Virus record (IMG/VR): IMGVR_UViG_3300035703_000005
Span: 124,001-188,000 of that record
DNA: 64,000 nt
Reading direction: 5' to 3' (one strand)
The notes under the pieces: model-generated
Database searches by the model: none
Told to the model about the DNA's origin: nothing
Seen by the model: only the letters and a program-made list of their open reading frames with translations
Translations under genes and position numbers: made by a program
Shown here: positions 13,894 to 46,893 of the stretch, one piece after another
Position numbering within the stretch: position 1 is the stretch's first letter
Layout of the letters: each line of letters opens with the position of its first letter

Positions 13894-14834
13894 TTGAATT
13901 CACACTCACACATAATTTCAGTTAATGCTGCAAGGATATTCACTTCCTGGTCAGCCACGAACGCACATTGGTATTGATACTTAGCAATAATAAGAACGGC
14001 AGCGGGGATAGACTGGGGTGAAAGATGGTCAAAAGAGGCGTCATAAACCCTGCGAAGTAGACTAGAAGCATCGTTGTCCAAGTTGGCGACCACCCACTTT
14101 CGGACTTCAGTAAAGTTTTTAGTTTTGAGATGTTTAATGAGTTCATTGACGGAAATATCTGAGAAAGATGCCAGAATTGCAGAGTCAATCTTTCCCCCAG
14201 TTGAATATCGTTGACATTCATTAAGAACTCTACGAAAATCTGGAAAATATTTTGTGACCAGTTGTGCAACAACTTTTTGATCATACTCAATTTTTTCTGC
14301 ATCCAAAATTAATTGGAGGCGTTGAAAGAAACTTTCCGCAAGTTGAATTTTTTGTTTTCCCTTAATAGTAAAATCAATTACTGCACATCTAGAATGAAGA
14401 GGTTCAATAATTTTATTTTTATAATTACAAGTAAAAATAAATCTACAATTATTATAAAATGACTCAATATTTGCCCTCAGAAGAAGTTGAACATCATGGG
14501 TTGTATTGTCACTTTCATCCACAATGATTACTTTGTGTTTACTGTTTCCTTGAAGTGATACGGTAGAAGCAAAGTTCTTTGCTTGGTTTCTAACTGTATC
14601 AAGAAATCGTCCCTCATCAGATCCATTAATTAGATAATAATCCGATCCAAGCTGCTCGCATAATGCTTTCGCAATAGTAGTTTTTCCAATACCAGGAGGA
14701 CCGGAAAGGAGAAGATTGGGAATTTCTCCCTTTTCAATAAAGTCCAAGAAAGTTTTTTTAGTATCCTCTGGGAGGATACAATCTTCTACTTTTTTTGGCC
14801 TCCACTTTTCCACCCACAAAAAATTATCAGTCAT
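13890..14834 (-). CDS. gp44: Clamp loader large subunit (gp44)
   Basis: LWVEKWRP, GPPGIGKTT, INGSD, LHSRC, FPDFRR. Confidence 0.96.
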   Translation of the reverse strand: MTDNFLWVEKWRPKKVEDCILPEDTKKTFLDFIEKGEIPNLLLSGPPGIGKTTIAKALCEQLGSDYYLINGSDEGRFLDTVRNQAKNFASTVSLQGNSKHKVIIVDESDNTTHDVQLLLRANIESFYNNCRFIFTCNYKNKIIEPLHSRCAVIDFTIKGKQKIQLAESFFQRLQLILDAEKIEYDQKVVAQLVTKYFPDFRRVLNECQRYSTGGKIDSAILASFSDISVNELIKHLKTKNFTEVRKWVVANLDNDASSLLRRVYDASFDHLSPQSIPAAVLIIAKYQYQCAFVADQEVNILAALTEIMCECEFK

Positions 14835-15283
14835 TAATAAACTCCATTCAATACATTCCAAATACTTCGTTGACTTTTACCCACAATATCAGCAATCTCT
14901 CTTTGAGGCAATCCTTGTTCAGAAAGATTTTTTATTTGTTGTTTAATCCCATCTCCTAATTGAGATCTTCCTTTTTTAAGTTCAGGTCTCCCCAAATGAG
15001 ACCTCCTTGTATTCTCGGAACGAGGCAACCATCTCAAGTTTTCAACTTTGTTATTGGTTTTGTTTTCATCAATATGGTCTATACACCAGTCTCTACCTTT
15101 TGGTTTTGGTTCTCCCCAACATTCTATTACAAGTTGATGAAGTCTTTTTTGACGAACATTAATGTATCCGTCTCTTTTATCAATTCTACCAATGGGTTTT
15201 ACATTTATAATTTTACCACAAGCACTTACATAAATGTCTGGATAAGTTTTTGATTGTTTGTAAGTAATTCCGTTAAGTTCCAT
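14834..15283 (-). CDS. Free-standing HNH homing endonuclease with C-terminal HTH
   Basis: LHQLV...IDHIDENKTNNKVENLRWL...EN, then an HTH (LPQREIADIVGKSQRSIWNVL); own late promoter. Confidence 0.88.
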   Translation of the reverse strand: MELNGITYKQSKTYPDIYVSACGKIINVKPIGRIDKRDGYINVRQKRLHQLVIECWGEPKPKGRDWCIDHIDENKTNNKVENLRWLPRSENTRRSHLGRPELKKGRSQLGDGIKQQIKNLSEQGLPQREIADIVGKSQRSIWNVLNGVY

Positions 15284-15304
15284 TGGAAGAGTAATAACTA
15301 TTAG

Positions 15305-15341
15305 TATTTATATCCAAACTACACTAAATGTAGTTTGGATA
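15305..15341 (-). promoter_or_regulatory. Late promoter TATAAATA abutting a perfect 13-bp inverted repeat
   Basis: TATCCAAACTACA-5 nt-TGTAGTTTGGATA at 15311-15341; TATAAATA at 15312-15305. Confidence 0.75.
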
Positions 15342-15342
15342 A

Positions 15343-15855
15343 TTAAATCCAATCAGGTTTTCGTTCGGGCATACGAAGGTAATTATCCTTCACCCAAGGT
15401 TTAGAAGCAATATACCTTTTATAAGCAGTAAAGGTATCAATACTATCATCAAACTTCCACTCTTCTGGCATTGCACGAGCAAATGGAGTTACTTCTGTGA
15501 TCTTTCCCTTAGGAAAAAGGTAGTAAGCATCTACAAGTGTTTTGTAACAAGAGTGCGTTTTATTATAACGCAAGGCATATTCATCCGCAAGATTCATTCC
15601 CCACTTGATCAACCAATAGGCATTATGGATACTTTCCATTGCCCATTTGGTACAGGGATGATTACGAAACGCACCCTTTTCAGTTCTGTAGGGAGTACCA
15701 TCAGCTTTAGGGAGAGTGCCGTAGTTATGACCCCATTTTTCAGATGCCACAATGGAAAGCATTTGACAGCACTCCAGTGGCATCTTGACAATGTGTTTAT
15801 CGGGAAGACAGACAGCACTCTCTGCAGGCCAGGGAGAAGTCACAAAAATGTTCAT
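15343..15855 (-). CDS. Pyrimidine-dimer DNA glycosylase / DenV-like protein
   Basis: MNIF...DKHIVKMPLE...NHPCTKW...PFARAMP. Confidence 0.75.
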   Translation of the reverse strand: MNIFVTSPWPAESAVCLPDKHIVKMPLECCQMLSIVASEKWGHNYGTLPKADGTPYRTEKGAFRNHPCTKWAMESIHNAYWLIKWGMNLADEYALRYNKTHSCYKTLVDAYYLFPKGKITEVTPFARAMPEEWKFDDSIDTFTAYKRYIASKPWVKDNYLRMPERKPDWI

Positions 15856-15872
15856 AATAAAAGTGAGTCAAC

Positions 15873-16541
15873 TCACTCATCATAAGTGGAGTCGGGTTCC
15901 AAAGCAATGTAGTATGTAAGATTCTTATCTTCCGACTGGAATCGGGACAGGAGTTTCTTGGAGATCACAACCTCATAAGAACCAGGAAGAATCTTAATGT
16001 TCTCAACCTTAAAGTTCAGAACAAAAGTACCAGTGGTCTCACCAACAACCAGCGAATATTCGTTAGAAGTATCATTCTTCTTATCACGAACAACTAGTTT
16101 CACAACACCAGCTTCACCAACCACAGAAAGGTCTGGAACACCATAAACTGCTGCAGCCTTGAGAAGTTTATCCAGTTGTTGAGTATTCAGTTCAAAACAG
16201 ACATCCTCAGAAGGAAGAGAAATGGACTTTTCGGGAGGAGTCACAATCACTGCAGGATCAGCGAAGAAATACTTGGATCGTGCATTACCCTCACTGACAG
16301 TCACATAACTATCGTTCGCAAACTTAAGTTGGGGATTCTGATAGAGAGACATTGCATTCAGGAACTGGTTCAGGTCATAAATGCCAAAGTCGCGTTCAAA
16401 TTCTTCTTCAACTTCCACTTCTGCAAGGATATTCTTCATCACAGAAATCGTGCGAAGTTTATTACCTTTCTTGAAGAGAATAGACTGGTTAATACCAGAG
16501 AAGTTCTTGAGAAGGGAAAGAGTTTTTTCAGAAAGTTTCAT
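15873..16541 (-). CDS. gp45: Sliding clamp (gp45)
   Basis: MKLSEKTLSLLKNFSGINQS, FGIYDLNQFL, YYIALE. Confidence 0.96.
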   Translation of the reverse strand: MKLSEKTLSLLKNFSGINQSILFKKGNKLRTISVMKNILAEVEVEEEFERDFGIYDLNQFLNAMSLYQNPQLKFANDSYVTVSEGNARSKYFFADPAVIVTPPEKSISLPSEDVCFELNTQQLDKLLKAAAVYGVPDLSVVGEAGVVKLVVRDKKNDTSNEYSLVVGETTGTFVLNFKVENIKILPGSYEVVISKKLLSRFQSEDKNLTYYIALEPDSTYDE

Positions 16542-16558
16542 AGTGTTGTCCTTGAGTT

Positions 16559-16936
16559 TCACTTGTTTTCTACCAGGTTAAGGTGATTGATCAAAAGAAT
16601 AGTATAGTGGAGAACTTTGAAAAGATCCGCACGAGGAGTTCCTTTTGTGTCGTAACGATCAATATACTTGGTCACATTTCCTGCACAAAATCCTTCACGA
16701 CGATTGTGTTTAATTTTATCAAGAGTCTGTTCAGTTCCACCTCCAGTCCTATCAACATAATGTTGACTATAAGTTCCAGAAATATATTCCTCAAGTTGTT
16801 TGAGAATTTTATCTTCGTTATATTTCCAAAAATGATTTGAGTTGTCGTTCATAACAGGTTTTTTGTCAATTACAATTTTATCTTCACTATTCATTGAAAT
16901 AGTGAATTCATTCATAGAATAGGGATGTTCGTCCAT
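16559..16936 (-). CDS. Conserved hypothetical protein, DUF3310-like (possible nucleotide kinase)
   Basis: TYSQHY...GFCAGNVTKYIDRY..KG...DLFK; start codon uncertain. Confidence 0.6.
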   Translation of the reverse strand: MDEHPYSMNEFTISMNSEDKIVIDKKPVMNDNSNHFWKYNEDKILKQLEEYISGTYSQHYVDRTGGGTEQTLDKIKHNRREGFCAGNVTKYIDRYDTKGTPRADLFKVLHYTILLINHLNLVENK

Positions 16937-16974
16937 AATAAAGGGAAGGCGCATTTTTACCTTCCCCAATTATA

Positions 16975-18105
16975 TCAGAACGGAGCGGGTTGGTCAAGGT
17001 CGTAAGTTACGTGCTCACCACCTTCAGAAGGCATTTTGAAATCAGCATCCACCTTGTCATAGAGTTCCAGGAAAGATTGCTTGGTCTCATCGTCAAAGCG
17101 ATTCACACACACTTGAATCGCTTTAGCCTTGTCATTGAAGATGCTGTAGGCACGGATGATATGAACCAGACGGCGGGTGCTGATGATTTCTTCAATACCA
17201 CCATCGTAAAAAGTCTTGCGGATAATGTCGGCCCAATCTGCGAGACGCTTACAGAAATTGGAATCATTTACACCAAGAGTTTGAGCAACTTTCTCAAGAA
17301 TCTTGACTTCATTTGCAACAGAAGGATATTCCTGTTCAAAGGTCACAGGGAAACGCTCAAGAAATGCTTCATTGAGAACGTTAGTACCGATAAAACGACC
17401 ATCATCCGAACCCTTACCTTTGGTATTTGCAGTAGCAACAACATTGAAACCAGAAGTAGGTTTAACGAACTTACCAATTTTCTTGAGGAAAACGCCTTTA
17501 CCTTCAAGAACAGATTGCAGACACAGAATTTTGTTAGAGGCAAGGTCAATTTCATCCAACAGGAGAATTGCGCCACGCTCAAGGGCTTCAATCACAGGGC
17601 CATTGTGCCAAGCGGTTTCACCGTTCACAAGACGGAAGCCACCAATCAGATCATCCTCATCAGTCTCAATGGTAATGTTAACACGGATTAGCTCCCGACC
17701 CAACTGAGCACAAGCTTGTTCCACTCCAAAAGTCTTCCCGTTACCGCTAAGACCAGTGATAAAGGTAGGGTAAAACAGACGACTGGAAATAATTTTCTTA
17801 ATGTCGTTAAAATTGCCAAACTTGACGAAGGTATCATCTTTTTCGGGAATAAGGTTTTGATGTACTTCAGGGAGAACTGCAACATTGTTAAAAGAACGCT
17901 CAATTTCTTCCACACGCTCTTGAGTCACTTCCAGATTCCAACGACCACGAGCAGTCTTAAAATTTTCAAGACGGCGAGTAACCGTAGGATAAGAAAGATT
18001 GTTCATCGCACAATAGGCTTTGACATCACCAGAAGTAATATCAGAACCATAAGTGGACTTAAGACCTTCCAGGATTTGATCGTCGTTCATTTGAAGGCGG
18101 GGCAT
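16975..18105 (-). CDS. cobS: CobS-like MoxR-family AAA+ ATPase
   Basis: GLSGNGKT, LLLDEID, ATANTKGKG, NEAFLERF, ISTRRL. Confidence 0.9.
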   Translation of the reverse strand: MPRLQMNDDQILEGLKSTYGSDITSGDVKAYCAMNNLSYPTVTRRLENFKTARGRWNLEVTQERVEEIERSFNNVAVLPEVHQNLIPEKDDTFVKFGNFNDIKKIISSRLFYPTFITGLSGNGKTFGVEQACAQLGRELIRVNITIETDEDDLIGGFRLVNGETAWHNGPVIEALERGAILLLDEIDLASNKILCLQSVLEGKGVFLKKIGKFVKPTSGFNVVATANTKGKGSDDGRFIGTNVLNEAFLERFPVTFEQEYPSVANEVKILEKVAQTLGVNDSNFCKRLADWADIIRKTFYDGGIEEIISTRRLVHIIRAYSIFNDKAKAIQVCVNRFDDETKQSFLELYDKVDADFKMPSEGGEHVTYDLDQPAPF

Positions 18106-38814: not shown

Positions 38815-39045
38815 TCACCAGTCAGGATATTCCCACAAATGGGCTGAACTTTTATTTTTCTTACTTTCTGTTATTCTTTTGATTGTGCATGTTTTACACT
38901 CATATGAATACGCAGAGGGTATTCTACCTTTACCTTTACGTGTTAAATAAAATCCATCTATAAGATCTTTAACTTCCCCACATACTCTACATTTTCTCTC
39001 TGTCAAAAATAAATGTTCTAATTCGAATTGGTTGTTGAGATCCAT
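38815..39045 (-). CDS. Small zinc-ribbon protein
   Basis: CRVC...YECKTC; start coupled to the gp17 stop (TAATG). Confidence 0.7.
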   Translation of the reverse strand: MDLNNQFELEHLFLTERKCRVCGEVKDLIDGFYLTRKGKGRIPSAYSYECKTCTIKRITESKKNKSSAHLWEYPDW

Positions 39046-40694
39046 TATCGATAATCCCACATAAAAGATCTATCGCCATACTCATCAATATGCCAACGAT
39101 CCCCATCATCATCAATAAAACTTTCACCACCATCCAAACCATCAGAAATAAAACCAAATGGAGCCATATCCTGTTCAATTTGATTTTTCTGTTCCTCATA
39201 CAATCTTTTACGAACGTCATTGTCCGTCATTTCCTTAAAATATGGTTGTGCAATTAACCACGCAAAAATTACTAAACACATTGCAAGGTCATCATTACAA
39301 CCATCTTCCGCTTCAAAAGAATTTGACTTTTGAATAAAAGTCGTTAATTCGCTTATAGTGTCGTAATCGTTAATTACCAACTTATCACTTTCAATTAATG
39401 TCTTAAGATTCATGCATCCAATCTTTTTGACATTCTTAGACATTTTTACTCCCATCTGAGACTTTTTGCCTGAGAATCCTTGGCCAACCAATTGTCCTGC
39501 ACGACCCCTCATCGTACACATAAGGACATTATCATATTCCAGATCCATGTGAAGGATTTGTCCTACCTGTTCTCCAATATCATTAACTTCTACGAGAATA
39601 TATGCCTTATTATAAGCGACTGCAAGATCTTTAATAACACTTGGAAACAACATGGGTTTTATTTGATTGTCTCTGTATTTTGCTACAAGACGATATGGAA
39701 ATGATGTTGTATCGCAAATAGTAAATGCAGAATAATCTTTTTCTACACCACGAGCTACGTCTACTGTTAAAACATAGTTATGATCTTTTTGTGGTTCTTC
39801 GTAAATATCCAATCCAGCGTTTGATTTAATAGGATCTTCATAAACTAAGGATCTGAGTTTAGCTGCAGATATAAGAGTATCAACAGACCCTAAAAATTCA
39901 CATTCAAACTCTACTTTAAACTGTTGTTCCGATGTGTTTGCAATGGTCTGAGCTTTCCACTTTTCATCCCTACCAGGAACTTCTGACCAGTGAACATCGG
40001 TTGGGATATACTCATTTTTACCCCTCTCCGCATCATGCCAGATGCGGTAGAAGTGATTCATACCCTTTGGGGTAGAAACAATCAGGACTTTTGTGCTTTG
40101 GCCTGACGAAATAGTAGGATAAACAGAGGCAAAGAATTCATCAGCAATGTGATTTGGAATGAACGCGAATTCGTCCAAAAAGATGACATTGTACGATCCG
40201 CCTCGGACAGCAGATGCAGAAGTAGATGCGGCGATAATCTTGGAACCATTTTCTAGTTCTAACGATCTTTTATTCCATGATACAATACCTTGTTGCATCC
40301 ACTTCGGCAGTTTTTCGTATGCAAACTGTAATCTACTAAGTAGGTCTTGTGCAGTGGATGCCTTGTTGGCTAGAATAGCTATGTTGACATTATCATTAAA
40401 GACCGCATAATGTAACAAATATGAAACACAAGTTGTAGATTTACCTGTCTGTCGAGGCATTCTACAAATATTAAATCTATTTTGATGGAAATTAGTGATC
40501 AACTTCTCCTGAAACGGATACATCTTAAATGGTATCTCACCATGATCCAGTGAAACAATCTTGATATAATTTTTAGCAAAATACACAGGATCATTCTTGC
40601 ACTTGATAAACTCAAGAATTTGTTCCTGTGTAAATTCTACTGGTACATTAGCCTTTTTAAGGTTTGGGTTCCCCAAATAAACTTGATCACTCAT
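39045..40694 (-). CDS. gp17: Terminase large subunit (gp17)
   Basis: PRQTGKST, LDEFAF, STPKG, DVARG, DDLAM. Confidence 0.98.
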   Translation of the reverse strand: MSDQVYLGNPNLKKANVPVEFTQEQILEFIKCKNDPVYFAKNYIKIVSLDHGEIPFKMYPFQEKLITNFHQNRFNICRMPRQTGKSTTCVSYLLHYAVFNDNVNIAILANKASTAQDLLSRLQFAYEKLPKWMQQGIVSWNKRSLELENGSKIIAASTSASAVRGGSYNVIFLDEFAFIPNHIADEFFASVYPTISSGQSTKVLIVSTPKGMNHFYRIWHDAERGKNEYIPTDVHWSEVPGRDEKWKAQTIANTSEQQFKVEFECEFLGSVDTLISAAKLRSLVYEDPIKSNAGLDIYEEPQKDHNYVLTVDVARGVEKDYSAFTICDTTSFPYRLVAKYRDNQIKPMLFPSVIKDLAVAYNKAYILVEVNDIGEQVGQILHMDLEYDNVLMCTMRGRAGQLVGQGFSGKKSQMGVKMSKNVKKIGCMNLKTLIESDKLVINDYDTISELTTFIQKSNSFEAEDGCNDDLAMCLVIFAWLIAQPYFKEMTDNDVRKRLYEEQKNQIEQDMAPFGFISDGLDGGESFIDDDGDRWHIDEYGDRSFMWDYR

Positions 40695-40697
40695 AAA

Positions 40698-40868
40698 TTA
40701 AAACTTCGCTAAACTTGCTACAACCTCTTGTTGTTTAAGATAAAGTTTAAAATAAGATTTTGCAAATTCTATTGCTTCTTCTCTATCTAATTTATCTATA
40801 ACCCTTGACTGTTGTTCATAAATCAACATCTTATTAATATCTTCAAGTTTAATTTCATCGGGGTTCAT
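40698..40868 (-). CDS. 56-aa helical protein, NblA-like; not in ORF track
   Basis: MNPDEIKLEDINKMLIYEQQSRVIDKLDREEAIEFAKSYFKLYLKQQEVVASLAKF; exactly fills the gap before gp17. Confidence 0.6.
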   Translation of the reverse strand: MNPDEIKLEDINKMLIYEQQSRVIDKLDREEAIEFAKSYFKLYLKQQEVVASLAKF

Positions 40869-40869
40869 T

Positions 40870-43065
40870 TCATTTACCTTGAATAACTACGATTGGTTTA
40901 GATGGATCGGTAGGACTTGGATACCATTGCAGTATAACTGCGCCTGGATAAAACTTTTCAATTTCCGCTTTTACTTCATCTTTAGAAGGTCTCTTCATAT
41001 TTGGGAAGAAGAGTTGAAGATTCATCATTGGTCTACCTCTCCAAGAGAAGAGTATAGTATAAACATTACCAGTAGATTGTATCCGTTGATAATCTTCGTT
41101 TGTAATTTGTCCTGGTTGAATTACGGAGTCTGCAAGAGGTAGAGAGGGTCCTGAAAGCTTCTTAAGTGCGGCATTCTTTTCGTTAGGATTAGTATTACCA
41201 GTTGCAAGATTTCGGATCTTAGCTTGTTTTTGTGCTTGTCTATGTCCAGAACCAATTTCAAAACTTACATTTTCATTTGCTGGATGCACTTTTGCAATAC
41301 TGTAAGGTTGTTCTGGAGCTAATGAGGAAGGTAGTGAGAACATTCTCCAATATCCTTCACCGTATCTACATTCAGATGCAGTTTCATTTTTTTGACATTT
41401 GGGACAATATCTAATTCCCATTTCTTCTGGAATGAACTCTTCTTTCTTCGTCTTATTTCCCCAGTTTTTTGCACCAACCTTACGACACTTAACGAGAGCG
41501 CCAGATGCATATGCAGAAGGCCAAACCTTATAACGAGATTTTACTTTTGAATAACATGCGTCCTTTTCTTCACTAACATCCAAAAATTCTTCTTTTCTAA
41601 TATCTGACTTTGTTACTGATGATGGATAAGAACTCTCTTTACTCTTAGGAACATTTGTTCCCATAATTTCTCTTCTTACTTGACCAGCATCTTTTTTCCA
41701 AAATGGATTCTTCTTAAATTCGTGTTTCTTACCCTTGGGTTGATCCCTCTTCTTTTCCATTTTCTTCTGTGCCGCAGAAAGATTGCCGTGTCTAGCATAT
41801 TCTTTCTCGCCAGGACCACCCTTCTCAAATGATTGAGTATCTGGGTTATCTACACCTAATTGTTTTCTCTTGGCCTCAGACTTTTCCTTTGGAGTATAGC
41901 CTGAAGGATTTGGATTTTTCTTGTCATCCCAAGCAACTTTACCTTCAGTCGCAACCATTTTTGCCTTACCCTTTCTATTGGGATTTGGATCTTTTTCATT
42001 CTTACGACGAAATGCTCTCTCCTCTTCCTTATCGGAGAGCTCTGTTTTCATTTTACTTGAACCGCACTTTGGTTTAGTTGTTTGTCCTGGTTGTTTTGCA
42101 CAGGGTTTCCCTGCGTATTTACCACCCAATTGAACCCAACCAGGGGTGCCATCAGAAGCGCGACTCTTAGTAAACCAGTCACGCAAAGAACTATCACCAC
42201 TTTTGTTTTCATTAATAGAATCCTCCTTCACACAGTTAGGAACGACTTTTTTGCCCTTCTTTTTCATTCCAAGTTGTTTGTATCCATCCCAGCATTTTTC
42301 ATTTAAACCTTTAATCCATTCATCTGGAGTTTTATCATGTTTTTTAACAAATGCATTATGAAGTTCTTTTGCAGTCATATCATGTTCTTTCATGATACTA
42401 CGCATTAATTTATCAATGGAGTCATAAGAAGTATCATCTAATTTTTTAAGTCTACTTTCAAGTTCTTCAACTGCATCTTCATTTATTGGTTGAGTAAAAC
42501 TTTTAAACTTATAATCACTACCTTTAATGATGTCAACAACATGTGCAAAAGTATTACCATTTGCGTCATGAAGTTCTGTCCATTCTTCCTTTACTTTCTC
42601 CATCTTTTTGAGTTTGGAGTAATAATTGGGAATTTCATCTAAATGTTGCAATGCAATATCCATTGCTTCATCATTATCTGTAGTATGTTCATGTTCAACT
42701 TTCATCCCCATCTCAAGTTGTTTTTGGATGATTGATGGAGATACTTTATGCTTTTTTGCGATTTCTTCTACTGATTTATGACCTTTGAAACCTTCTTTAA
42801 CTTCTTTCTTTCTTTCGGTATCATCTTCTCCATGAGAGAGATGATCAGCTACTGTATCAAGATACTCTGCAGCCTTTGTAATCTTTGATTGCACCCATGC
42901 TTCCAAATCACCTTCACCTTTAAGTTTAGTCATCAATCTGATGATTGCAGCCTGTGCAGTTTTAAGTTCTCCACGAGCCATAGAAAACTCAAAATCCTCC
43001 CCAAGAGGTGCGATTGTTTCTAGGTCTGCAATAATAGACCACTCTTTAAAGGTGAGTTTATCCAT
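40870..43065 (-). CDS. 731-aa multi-module protein, putative internal polyprotein
   Basis: A string of unrelated small modules (GMKVEHEHT..., KCWDGYK...PNCV, KDACYSKVK...WPSAYASG) separated by xxE sites; CTAAATA at 43090-43096. Confidence 0.8.
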   Translation of the reverse strand: MDKLTFKEWSIIADLETIAPLGEDFEFSMARGELKTAQAAIIRLMTKLKGEGDLEAWVQSKITKAAEYLDTVADHLSHGEDDTERKKEVKEGFKGHKSVEEIAKKHKVSPSIIQKQLEMGMKVEHEHTTDNDEAMDIALQHLDEIPNYYSKLKKMEKVKEEWTELHDANGNTFAHVVDIIKGSDYKFKSFTQPINEDAVEELESRLKKLDDTSYDSIDKLMRSIMKEHDMTAKELHNAFVKKHDKTPDEWIKGLNEKCWDGYKQLGMKKKGKKVVPNCVKEDSINENKSGDSSLRDWFTKSRASDGTPGWVQLGGKYAGKPCAKQPGQTTKPKCGSSKMKTELSDKEEERAFRRKNEKDPNPNRKGKAKMVATEGKVAWDDKKNPNPSGYTPKEKSEAKRKQLGVDNPDTQSFEKGGPGEKEYARHGNLSAAQKKMEKKRDQPKGKKHEFKKNPFWKKDAGQVRREIMGTNVPKSKESSYPSSVTKSDIRKEEFLDVSEEKDACYSKVKSRYKVWPSAYASGALVKCRKVGAKNWGNKTKKEEFIPEEMGIRYCPKCQKNETASECRYGEGYWRMFSLPSSLAPEQPYSIAKVHPANENVSFEIGSGHRQAQKQAKIRNLATGNTNPNEKNAALKKLSGPSLPLADSVIQPGQITNEDYQRIQSTGNVYTILFSWRGRPMMNLQLFFPNMKRPSKDEVKAEIEKFYPGAVILQWYPSPTDPSKPIVVIQGK

Positions 43066-43088: not shown

Positions 43089-43520
43089 TTATTTAGATAG
43101 ATCTGGATTCATAGAACTCTTTAAAAACTTTTGAAGTTCTGCAGTAGATCCCAGAAATACAGCATTATTAGTAACATTAGTCGGTACAGATCCTTTCTGT
43201 TCTTGATTAATATCTTTCATCTTCTTCTGAAGATCCAAAAGTTTATCCGTAACATCTCCGACATTTTTAATCAGTTGTCCAGCAACCTCATATGCTCTTG
43301 GAGAATCAGATTCTTGTGCAAGTTCTAGGATGCCATTAATTGCCTCTTGACCTTTTTCAATAATTGAATAAAGTTGACCTCTAGAATACTCATAATCTTT
43401 TTGAAGTTGATCGACAACATCAGAAGTTTTTTGTATTTCTGGTTTATCTACCTTAACTATTTCCGACTCTATTGGGGTAGTTTCGATATTTAGAGCCTTA
43501 TCAATATCTTCAAAACTCAT
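43089..43520 (-). CDS. gp16: Terminase small subunit (gp16)
   Basis: DYEYSR, PRAYEVAGQLIK, FLGSTAELQK. Confidence 0.94.
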   Translation of the reverse strand: MSFEDIDKALNIETTPIESEIVKVDKPEIQKTSDVVDQLQKDYEYSRGQLYSIIEKGQEAINGILELAQESDSPRAYEVAGQLIKNVGDVTDKLLDLQKKMKDINQEQKGSVPTNVTNNAVFLGSTAELQKFLKSSMNPDLSK

Positions 43521-46859: not shown

Positions 46860-46893
46860 AAAAAATACCCCTAGTTTCCTAGAGGTATTTATA
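46860..46893 (-). promoter_or_regulatory. Late promoter overlapping a GAAA-loop hairpin directly before gp13
   Basis: TATAAATACCTCTAG-GAAA-CTAGGGGTATTTTTATG. Confidence 0.75.

What the first reader, a model, noticed from the sequence alone, without database searches (positions are those of the whole stretch)
40698..40868. Unannotated NblA-like ORF next to the terminase
Seen: a 56-aa two-helix pattern, IKLE...YEQQSRVIDKLDREEAIEFAKSYFKLYLKQQEVV. It parallels cyanobacterial NblA (L(S/T)LEQxF....xxVxxMSxEQAxxFL..LY.QM), especially in the LDREEAIEF turn, although the LEQxF motif is divergent. Known: NblA targets phycobilisomes for proteolysis and some cyanophages encode it. Its location in a late packaging operon would be unusual.
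Basis: partly seen in the sequence, partly recalled or inferred. Interest (0 to 1): 0.6.

Follow-up and report, generated by a model that had tools for sequence, protein, structure and literature searches.

The report
Divergent NblA-like gene in a cyanophage
A real, conserved 56-residue gene wedged between the two terminase genes of a T4-like cyanophage belongs to a published group of cyanophage proteins that look like NblA, the adaptor that sends the cyanobacterial light-harvesting antenna to a protease. It is therefore a new member of a known kind, and its activity has not been tested.

Summary
The ORF is at 40698..40868, on the minus strand. It has 56 codons and starts 1 nt after the stop of a 731-aa gene. 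It ends 3 nt before terL.

It is a real gene. There are 176 word-search relatives and 169 representative clusters. Close relatives differ almost only by synonymous changes (dN/dS about 0.06). It matches phrog_27081 at E 4.5e-14.

In 50,697 phage records, homologues occur only in Synechococcus phages and cyanophages. Two are already annotated as NblA: S-SCSM2R (same terS..terL synteny) and S-SCSM1. The phage list matches a published HHpred table.

Pfam NblA (PF04485) is not met by this protein or anywhere in the genome. Three other lines support NblA kinship:
- Direct hhalign against canonical NblAs gives 42% probability, P 2.6e-4.
- A bridging subgroup gives 99.4% to this family and 93.8% to canonical NblA.
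- An AlphaFold2 model (pLDDT 91.7) has the three NblA crystal structures as its top three hits among 48,161 chains.

A homodimer is predicted (0.65 against 0.00 for controls). L53 and K55 align with the phycobiliprotein-binding L51 and K53. The N-terminal LEQ motif is not conserved.

The genome also carries psbA, psbD and cpeT. The g15-g18 interval is a known insertion hotspot, so the location is not unusual.

Verdict: new member of a known kind, modest interest.

The parts
40698..40868 (-). 56-aa NblA-like gene (P0001): helix 1 residues 11-25, turn 26-28, helix 2 residues 29-55
   Evidence: ORF and translation. phrog_27081 at E 4.5e-14. AF2 model pLDDT 91.7. NblA crystal structures rank 1-3. 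hhalign to canonical NblA. dN/dS 0.06.
40877..40880 (-). AAGG, a Shine-Dalgarno-like element 8 nt upstream of the ATG, lying inside the end of the upstream gene
   Evidence: Read directly from the minus-strand sequence. Function is inferred.
40870..43065 (-). Upstream 731-aa gene (DUF5661 / phrog_727). Its TGA stop is 1 nt before the NblA-like ATG.
   Evidence: It has the same position in S-SCSM2R and in environmental relatives.
39045..40694 (-). Large terminase subunit (gp17-like). Its ATG is 3 nt after the NblA-like TAA stop.
   Evidence: PF03237 at 1.8e-23 and PF17289 at 3.2e-13. phrog_2.
43089..43520 (-). Small terminase subunit (gp16-like), the upstream boundary of the inserted interval
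   Evidence: PF11053 at 9.1e-12. phrog_445 at 8.5e-55.

Best explanation
The ORF encodes a divergent viral member of the NblA superfamily. NblA is a 6-7 kDa helix-loop-helix protein that forms a homodimer and acts as a proteolysis adaptor. The proposed mechanism is as follows. During infection of a phycobilisome-bearing picocyanobacterium, the dimer's exposed C-terminal tips (L53, K55) bind phycobiliprotein subunits. The strongly conserved helix 1 engages the host ClpC chaperone or an equivalent partner. The antenna is then handed to the host Clp protease, which frees amino acids and cuts light harvesting. The gene sits in the g15-g18 hyperplastic interval. It is packed with 1-nt and 3-nt gaps between a 731-aa gene and terL, so it is most likely co-transcribed with the late packaging and structural genes. 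Shown here: the gene is real and under purifying selection; its fold, predicted dimer and remote homology match NblA; the family is restricted to cyanophages. Inferred: binding partners, phycobilisome degradation and timing of expression.
For: Structure: the AF2 model has pLDDT 91.7. Among 48,161 PDB representatives the three best matches are the three NblA crystal structures: 1ojh_A (Z 6.9, rmsd 1.2 A, 50 of 52 residues), 2q8v_A (Z 6.3) and 3cs5_A (Z 5.3, rmsd 0.9 A, 46 of 48). A PF04485 cyanobacterial cluster is among the nearest ESM Atlas models, with TM 0.74/0.77 over 51 residues. The best BFVD hit is the S-SCSM1 'phycobilisome degradation protein'.

Sequence: hhalign of family alignment A1 against nine canonical NblAs gives 42% probability and P 2.6e-4. 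These nine pass Pfam where checked, at 88.8 and 51.8 bits. Only 1 of 200 column shuffles reaches the A1 score, and 0 of 200 reach the score of the 90-sequence alignment A2. Subgroup A3 links the two: A1-A3 gives 99.4% (E 1e-21) and A3-NblA gives 93.8% (E 1.7e-7), falling to 65.5% without the two borderline members. P0251, found by the A1 profile at E 4.7e-5 library-wide, scores 25.1 bits on PF04485 against a cut-off of 25.

Functional positions: L53 and K55 align with Nostoc L51 and K53, the phycobiliprotein-binding positions named in PMC12695635. They are 84% L and 87% K in the close clade.

Dimer: ipSAE 0.65 against a best control of 0.00. This mark is reached by 20 of 30 solved homodimers and 1 of 23 solved monomers. 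Contacts agree at 98% or more between runs, and partner pLDDT is at least 83. A natural tandem two-domain fusion, P0122, also exists.

Phyletic pattern: homologues occur only in Synechococcus phages and cyanophages among 50,697 phage records. The four 'cellular' MAG hits include two that were checked, and both are cyanomyophage fragments.

Genome: psbA, psbD and cpeT are present.

Literature: the same clade scores 95-97% in HHpred against NblA (PMC9602691 Tables S2 and S4). Viral NblAs identified by the same kind of in-silico criteria were shown to be active (PMC12695635; bioRxiv 10.1101/494369).
Against: Pfam PF04485 does not match this protein at E<=10, nor any frame of the 248,835-bp genome. 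Only 2 of 39 close and 2 of 90 distant members touch it. Profiles A1 and A2 do not find NblA chains in PDB sequences at E<=10. Foldseek against PDB found nothing. Z scores of 5-7 are within the range the tool warns can reflect a common helical arrangement. The canonical N-terminal L-x-L-E-Q-x-F motif, which mediates ClpC binding in Nostoc (Karradt et al. 2008, from my own knowledge), is replaced by a different conserved motif, K13-x-[LF]-x-Y-E-x-x-x-R-x-I-D. No member of this myovirus clade has been tested experimentally. No cellular picocyanobacterial homologue was recovered here.
Confidence: 0.6

Rival explanations
1. It has the NblA fold but a changed job. It could pair with host NblA or compete for its sites and so block bleaching, acting as a dominant-negative mimic. 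Alternatively it could steer a protease to substrates other than the phycobilisome.
For: The canonical N-terminal LEQ motif is not conserved, while a different helix-1 motif is 98-100% conserved. The same genome carries genes that sustain photosynthesis: psbA, psbD and cpeT. One of two marine viral NblA variants failed to complement, and its authors floated heterodimers with host NblA (bioRxiv 10.1101/494369). Viral NblA also led to cleavage of non-phycobilisome proteins (PMC12695635).
Against: The C-terminal L and K binding positions are kept. A confident homodimer is predicted. T7-like cyanophage NblA is equally divergent from Pfam NblA and does degrade phycobilisomes (PMC12695635).
Confidence: 0.17
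2. It is an unrelated small helical-hairpin protein with a phage-internal role, for example a packaging or assembly accessory factor. On this view the likeness to NblA is a convergent helix-turn-helix geometry.
For: The gene is wedged between terS and terL with 1-3 nt gaps. In S-SRM01 and S-SCSM1 the homologue lies next to virion structural genes. The Pfam NblA threshold is not met. Two-helix hairpins are common, and Z is below 8.
Against: In S-TIM5 the homologue lies among host-like and tRNA genes (hli, ferredoxin, petE, transaldolase). In DSL-LC03 it stands alone on the other strand beside restriction-modification-like genes. The function is therefore not tied to packaging. The family is absent from the non-cyanobacterial T4-like phages that share the terminase. 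All three NblA crystal structures outrank 48,158 other chains over the full length of both partners. The profile alignment is colinear with P about 3e-4 directly and 1.7e-7 via the bridge.
Confidence: 0.12
3. It is not a gene, only a chance ORF in AT-rich DNA.
For: The ORF is short (56 codons) and the region has about 35% G+C.
Against: There are hundreds of length-conserved homologues. dN/dS is 0.06, and close relatives differ only by synonymous changes. The model is confident. JGI calls the gene.
Confidence: 0.01

Closest known systems
Synechococcus phage S-SCSM2R gp118, annotated 'NblA' (PQ898602.1)
   Same: It is 61% identical over 91% of the protein. It has the same synteny: neck genes, gp15, terS, a long hypothetical gene, the NblA-like gene, terL, a small endonuclease-like ORF, then sheath. 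The flanking DNA is the nearest match in the phage collection, at 76% nucleotide identity.
   Different: S-SCSM2R has an extra 91-aa ORF between the NblA-like gene and terL. It is a marine isolate on WH7803, whereas this record's nearest environmental copy (96%) comes from contigs labelled ME20xx/Rohwer. I take these, from my own knowledge, to be a freshwater lake series. The annotation there is also by similarity only.
S-SCSM1 ORF237 and its cyanomyovirus homologues (S-TIM5, S-SM2, S-SKS1, Bellamy, S-B43, S-B05, SynMITS9220M01, S-SRM01): the published putative nblA clade, phrog_27081
   Same: It is the same family, with tblastn E values from 2e-13 to 3e-2 and 36-56% identity and a phrog_27081 match at E 4.5e-14. 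The phage list is the same as in PMC9602691 Table S4, where HHpred gives 95-97% probability to NblA.
   Different: The genomic positions differ: an AMG/tRNA island in S-TIM5, between a virion protein gene and a helicase gene in S-SCSM1, and beside virion structural, baseplate and head-tail adaptor genes in S-SRM01. None has been tested experimentally.
NblA of T7-like cyanophage S-TIP37 (PMC12695635) and of the uncultured marine cyanophage G1 (bioRxiv 10.1101/494369)
   Same: These are small viral two-helix proteins that score poorly on Pfam NblA. They were recognised by custom profiles, HHpred and ColabFold dimers. Their predicted adaptor role is the same.
   Different: Those proteins are experimentally active (deletion mutant, ectopic expression, complementation). 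They belong to other phage lineages and lie next to the exonuclease gene in the replication module. S-TIP37 has T, not K, at the second binding position, whereas this protein keeps K.
Canonical cyanobacterial NblA (PF04485; Nostoc PCC 7120, PDB 1OJH; T. vulcanus 2Q8V; S. elongatus 3CS5)
   Same: The size and helix-loop-helix fold are the same (rmsd 0.9-1.2 A over 46-50 residues). A dimer is predicted. The matching positions are E30/A32 = E28/A30, K41 = K39, L53 = L51 and K55 = K53.
   Different: Sequence identity is 4-17%. The Pfam threshold is not met. The N-terminal L-S-L-E-Q-x-F motif and the C-terminal W56 are absent. This gene is viral and in a late-gene operon, not a nutrient-stress-induced cellular gene.

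Membership tests
NblA (Pfam PF04485 / NblA-ycf18) | Score at or above the Pfam gathering threshold (25 bits) | tested here: not met
   There is no PF04485 hit for P0001 at E<=10 and none in six frames of the whole genome. Positive controls score 88.8 bits (Nostoc) and 51.8 bits (Ma-LMM01).
NblA (Pfam PF04485 / NblA-ycf18) | Direct profile-profile homology to canonical NblA | tested here: inconclusive
   hhalign of A1 against A4 gives 42% probability and P 2.6e-4 over 38 columns. A2 against A4 gives 40% and P 2.9e-4 over 58 colinear columns. Only 1/200 and 0/200 column shuffles reach these scores, and the reversed control scores 11.
NblA (Pfam PF04485 / NblA-ycf18) | Transitive homology through intermediate sequences | tested here: met
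   A1-A3 gives 99.4% (E 1e-21). A3-A4 gives 93.8% (E 1.7e-7), or 65.5% without P0251 and P0268. P0251 is hit by the A1 profile at E 4.7e-5 and by PF04485 at 25.1 bits.
NblA (Pfam PF04485 / NblA-ycf18) | A polypeptide of about 50-65 residues folding as a short helix, a turn and a long helix, superposable on the crystal structures | tested here: met
   The model has pLDDT 91.7 with helices at 11-25 and 29-55. 1ojh, 2q8v and 3cs5 rank 1-3 of 48,161 chains with Z 6.9, 6.3 and 5.3. An Atlas NblA cluster gives TM 0.74/0.77.
NblA (Pfam PF04485 / NblA-ycf18) | Homodimer as the functional unit | tested here: met
   This is a prediction only. ipSAE is 0.65 against a best control of 0.00, a mark reached by 20 of 30 solved homodimers and 1 of 23 solved monomers. 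Contact agreement is at least 98% and pLDDT at least 83. Symmetric contacts fall at residues 32, 36 and 39, and residues 52-56 lie outside the interface.
NblA (Pfam PF04485 / NblA-ycf18) | C-terminal phycobiliprotein-binding positions (L51 and K53 of Nostoc NblA) | tested here: met
   L53 and K55 align with them in hhalign, and this register agrees with the end points of the structural alignment. They are 84% L and 87% K in the close clade. The positions are named in PMC12695635.
NblA (Pfam PF04485 / NblA-ycf18) | Conserved N-terminal helix motif (L-x-L-E-Q-x-F) that binds ClpC | tested here: not met
   The aligned residues are I11-N12-K13-M14-L15. E10 and Q11 are invariant in A4 but are N and K here. 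A different helix-1 motif is conserved instead. The role of the motif is from Karradt et al. 2008, my own knowledge.
NblA (Pfam PF04485 / NblA-ycf18) | Found in phycobilisome-bearing cyanobacteria or their viruses | tested here: met
   Homologues occur only in Synechococcus phage and cyanophage records. The genome encodes psbA, psbD and CpeT.
NblA (Pfam PF04485 / NblA-ycf18) | Causes phycobilisome degradation (bleaching); binds phycobiliproteins and ClpC | not testable with these tools
   This needs expression, pull-down or knockout experiments.
Cyanomyovirus putative-NblA clade (phrog_27081; S-SCSM1 ORF237 group) | Full-length sequence similarity to clade members | tested here: met
   phrog_27081 matches at E 4.5e-14 over residues 1-53. 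Identity to members is 36-61%. The genome holds a single copy.

The most novel reading that the evidence does not exclude
This myovirus clade keeps NblA's fold, dimer and antenna-binding tips but has swapped the ClpC-binding helix-1 motif for another conserved surface. It is also wired into the late packaging operon. It may therefore not be a simple bleaching factor. It could be a late-acting adaptor that recruits a different partner or substrate set, or a mimic that pairs with or out-competes host NblA to control when the antenna is dismantled.
Probability: 0.12. Interest if true: 0.6.

Novelty: new member of a known kind. Interest (0 to 1): 0.25.

Why it matters
Viral NblA has recently been shown to speed infection and depress light harvesting in ocean cyanobacteria, but only for T7-like phages. 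This finding adds a probably freshwater, roughly 249-kb T4-like cyanophage to the myovirus NblA-like clade. It shows that this clade numbers hundreds of environmental variants that standard Pfam annotation misses. It also gives independent structural and profile evidence for the NblA link. It points to one concrete open question: whether the replaced N-terminal motif still recruits ClpC. As a discovery it is incremental. The family, its putative function and even this exact gene position are already in the literature and in GenBank.

Tried and rejected
Sequence searches that gave nothing useful:
- Pfam on the protein, on 39 and 90 relatives, and on the whole genome gave no usable NblA hit. Weak hits such as AsnA, OGG_N, nSTAND_NTPase4 and RIIa, all at E>=0.01, are noise.
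- HMMER profiles A1 and A2 against PDB sequences found no NblA, only chance hits at E>=0.12.
- Foldseek against PDB found nothing.
- Word searches with P0251 and with the distant subgroup A3 found no named cellular NblA.
- tblastn of P0268 against plasmids and phages found no match.

Searches limited by the tools:
With A1 it found only mis-binned phage contigs.
The published claim that the clade clusters with picocyanobacterial NblAs was therefore not tested.
There is therefore no read-level or expression evidence, and read laying was not used.

Other checks:
- Promoter and terminator scans and the T4 late motif TATAAATA were at background. Co-transcription is inferred only from the 1-3 nt gene spacing.
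- Pfam on fusion and tandem relatives gave nothing.
- The absence of the family from Prochlorococcus phage records is noted, but it is not statistically meaningful given how rare the gene is.

Full report
**Observation**

The window is bases 124001-188000 of a 248,835-bp IMG/VR virus record.

The ORF is tightly packed. The TGA of the upstream 731-aa gene (40870..43065) ends 1 nt before its ATG. An AAGG lies 8 nt upstream of that ATG. The ATG of the large terminase gene (39045..40694) follows its TAA after 3 nt. Further upstream is the small terminase gene (43089..43520). Downstream are an 81-aa endonuclease-VII-like ORF and the tail sheath gene. No promoter-like or terminator-like site above background separates these genes. 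Co-transcription with the late packaging and structural genes is therefore the simplest reading, but it is an inference.

**Is it a gene?**

Yes.
- The word search found 176 proteins at E<=0.01, nearly all 53-61 residues long.
- An exhaustive HMMER profile search found 169 representative clusters at E<=0.001 among 1.84 billion proteins.
- PHROGs has the family as phrog_27081, function unknown, matched at E 4.5e-14 over the full length.
- Seven environmental contigs encode the identical protein with 2-3 synonymous and no non-synonymous differences. A 96%-identical copy gives 6 synonymous against 2 non-synonymous changes, dN/dS 0.06.
- JGI's gene caller already calls it, with no family assigned.

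**Whose gene is it?**

The flanking DNA is closest to Synechococcus T4-like cyanophages, with S-SCSM2R at 76% identity. The genome also encodes psbA, psbD and a CpeT-family protein. It holds a single copy of this family.

By tblastn against 50,697 phage records, credible hits are confined to Synechococcus phages and cyanophages. The only other hits are Bacillus phage matches at E=7 inside polymerase genes, which are noise. Four 'cellular' hits in GTDB genomes are contigs in Acetobacteraceae, Pirellulaceae, Methanobacteriota and Crocinitomicaceae MAGs. The two I checked are cyanomyophage fragments.

**What was already known**

Two homologues are annotated as NblA: S-SCSM2R gp118 and S-SCSM1 ORF237 ('phycobilisome degradation protein'). 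PMC9602691 predicted the S-SCSM1 gene by HHpred, with 95.5% probability to Nostoc NblA. It lists as homologues exactly the phages I found (S-B43, S-B05, S-SM2, Bellamy, S-SKS1, SynMITS9220M01, S-SRM01), each at 96-97% HHpred probability to T. vulcanus NblA. It also states that Nadel et al. had predicted an nblA in S-TIM5. None of these myovirus proteins has been tested.

Viral NblAs that have been tested come from other lineages. These are freshwater Ma-LMM01 and PaV-LD, an uncultured marine lineage (bioRxiv 10.1101/494369) and the T7-like S-TIP37. In S-TIP37, deletion and ectopic expression showed phycobilisome degradation and a benefit to the phage (PMC12695635).

**Independent test of the NblA link**

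Direct HMMER evidence fails.
- PF04485 does not match this protein or any frame of the genome.
- Only 2 of 39 and 2 of 90 relatives touch it.
- Family profiles do not find NblA chains among PDB sequences.

I therefore assembled nine canonical NblAs by reference: eight cyanobacterial plasmid genes annotated NblA/ycf18, plus Ma-LMM01 NblA. Two that I checked score 88.8 and 51.8 bits on PF04485.

- hhalign of the close family (A1) against them gives 42% probability and P 2.6e-4.
- The 90-sequence alignment (A2) gives 40% and P 2.9e-4 over 58 colinear columns.
- Only 1 of 200 (A1) and 0 of 200 (A2) column-shuffled controls reach these scores, and a reversed control scores 11 against 24-26.
- A distant subgroup found by the A1 profile (A3) bridges the gap. 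A1-A3 gives 99.4% (E 1e-21) and A3-NblA gives 93.8% (E 1.7e-7). The latter falls to 65.5% when the two members that themselves touch PF04485 are removed.
- One of those two, P0251, sits exactly on the Pfam threshold at 25.1 bits.

**Structure**

AlphaFold2 on the 39-sequence alignment gives pLDDT 91.7 and two helices. Foldseek found nothing in PDB.

The exhaustive aligner ranked the three NblA crystal structures first, second and third among 48,161 representative chains. Each match covers nearly the whole of both proteins: 1ojh Z 6.9, rmsd 1.2 A, 50 of 52 residues; 2q8v Z 6.3; 3cs5 Z 5.3, rmsd 0.9 A, 46 of 48. The tool warns that Z below 8 can be a common helical arrangement. The weight therefore lies in the ranking and the coverage, not in the Z values.

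The ESM Atlas search lists a cyanobacterial PF04485 cluster among the nearest models. BFVD's best hit is the S-SCSM1 protein.

A homodimer is supported. ipSAE is 0.65 against a best control of 0.00, a mark reached by 20 of 30 solved homodimers and 1 of 23 solved monomers. The runs agree in at least 98% of contacts, and partner pLDDT is at least 83. The interface centres on residues 32, 36 and 39 of helix 2 and on helix 1 of the other copy. The C-terminal residues 52-56 are left free. A natural protein with two tandem copies of the domain, P0122, fits a dimeric unit.

**Residues**

In the hhalign register, which agrees with the end points of the structural alignment, these positions match Nostoc NblA:
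- L27-D28-R29-E30-E31-A32 lies on M25-S26-R27-E28-Q29-A30.
- K41 lies on K39.
- L53 and K55 lie on L51 and K53.

L51 and K53 are the positions PMC12695635 marks as mediating phycobiliprotein binding. L53 is 84% L and K55 is 87% K in the close clade.

The canonical N-terminal LEQ is not kept: the residues here are N12 and K13. Instead K13, Y17, E18, R22, I24 and D25 are 95-100% conserved. From my own knowledge of Karradt et al. 2008, the canonical N-terminal motif mediates ClpC binding. Whether this clade still recruits ClpC is therefore the main open point.

**Location**

It is not.
- The g15-g18 interval is a recognised cyanomyovirus-specific hyperplastic region where host-like genes are inserted (PMC2984593).
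- S-SCSM2R carries its copy in the same slot.
- In S-SRM01 and S-SCSM1 the homologue lies next to virion structural genes.
- In S-TIM5 it lies among host-like and tRNA genes. In DSL-LC03 it stands alone on the opposite strand.

This mobility argues against a packaging-specific role.

**Verdict**

The most likely function is an NblA-type dimeric adaptor that delivers phycobiliproteins to a host protease (confidence about 0.6).

Two rivals remain: an NblA-fold protein with an altered partner or an antagonistic role (about 0.17), and an unrelated helical hairpin with a phage-internal role (about 0.12).

The finding is a new member of a known, already published kind, so interest is modest. Picocyanobacterial genomes could not be reached with the tools.

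Noticed in passing
window 40870..43065 (-): A 731-aa gene lies between terS and the NblA-like gene. It carries a DUF5661 domain (residues 100-157) and matches phrog_727. Relatives that encode the identical NblA-like protein have 638-, 681- and 731-aa versions, so its length is polymorphic. In S-T4 a 'virion structural protein' is annotated in the matching terS-terL interval.
   Followed up: partly
window 38815..39060 (-): An 81-aa endonuclease-VII-like ORF (phrog_4723, E 1.4e-36) overlaps the 3' end of terL by 16 nt. The ORF in the corresponding position in S-SCSM2R is annotated 'PacI protein'.
   Followed up: no
L004-L007 (genome contigs): Four contigs carrying homologues of this gene sit in MAGs labelled Acetobacteraceae, Pirellulaceae, Methanobacteriota and Crocinitomicaceae. 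The two I checked (L006, L007) match cyanomyophage genomes, so those MAGs hold mis-binned phage contigs. L004 encodes a 96%-identical copy of this gene.
   Followed up: partly
P0122; P0160, P0175, P0184 (representative proteins): P0122 (134 aa) carries two tandem NblA-like domains in one chain. P0160 and P0175 carry the domain at their N-terminal end, and P0184 at its C-terminal end, beside a further region that has no Pfam match (about 75 residues in P0160 and P0184).
   Followed up: partly
L032-L034 (contigs encoding P0272): One subgroup of the family has a C-terminus reading '...GLIKKGWLP', which resembles canonical NblA 'LLKHEW'. It sits alone on the opposite strand in contigs of 8 to 36 kb that are not T4-like. 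These carry PolA and a PriCT_2/AAA_25 primase-helicase, and L032 also has a sigma-70 gene. NblA-like genes therefore occur in a further phage lineage.
   Followed up: partly
window 15305, 22002, 35577, 46886, 61424 (-): All five exact TATAAATA (T4 late-promoter-like) matches lie on the minus, coding strand. The total count is not above shuffled expectation. The one at 46886 lies upstream of the neck-to-sheath gene block that contains the NblA-like gene.
   Followed up: no
G000:C1:73150-80112 and 14527-17982 (outside the window): The phage genome carries two Photo_RC genes, which I take to be psbA and psbD, and a CpeT-family gene that appears as two adjacent hits.
   Followed up: no
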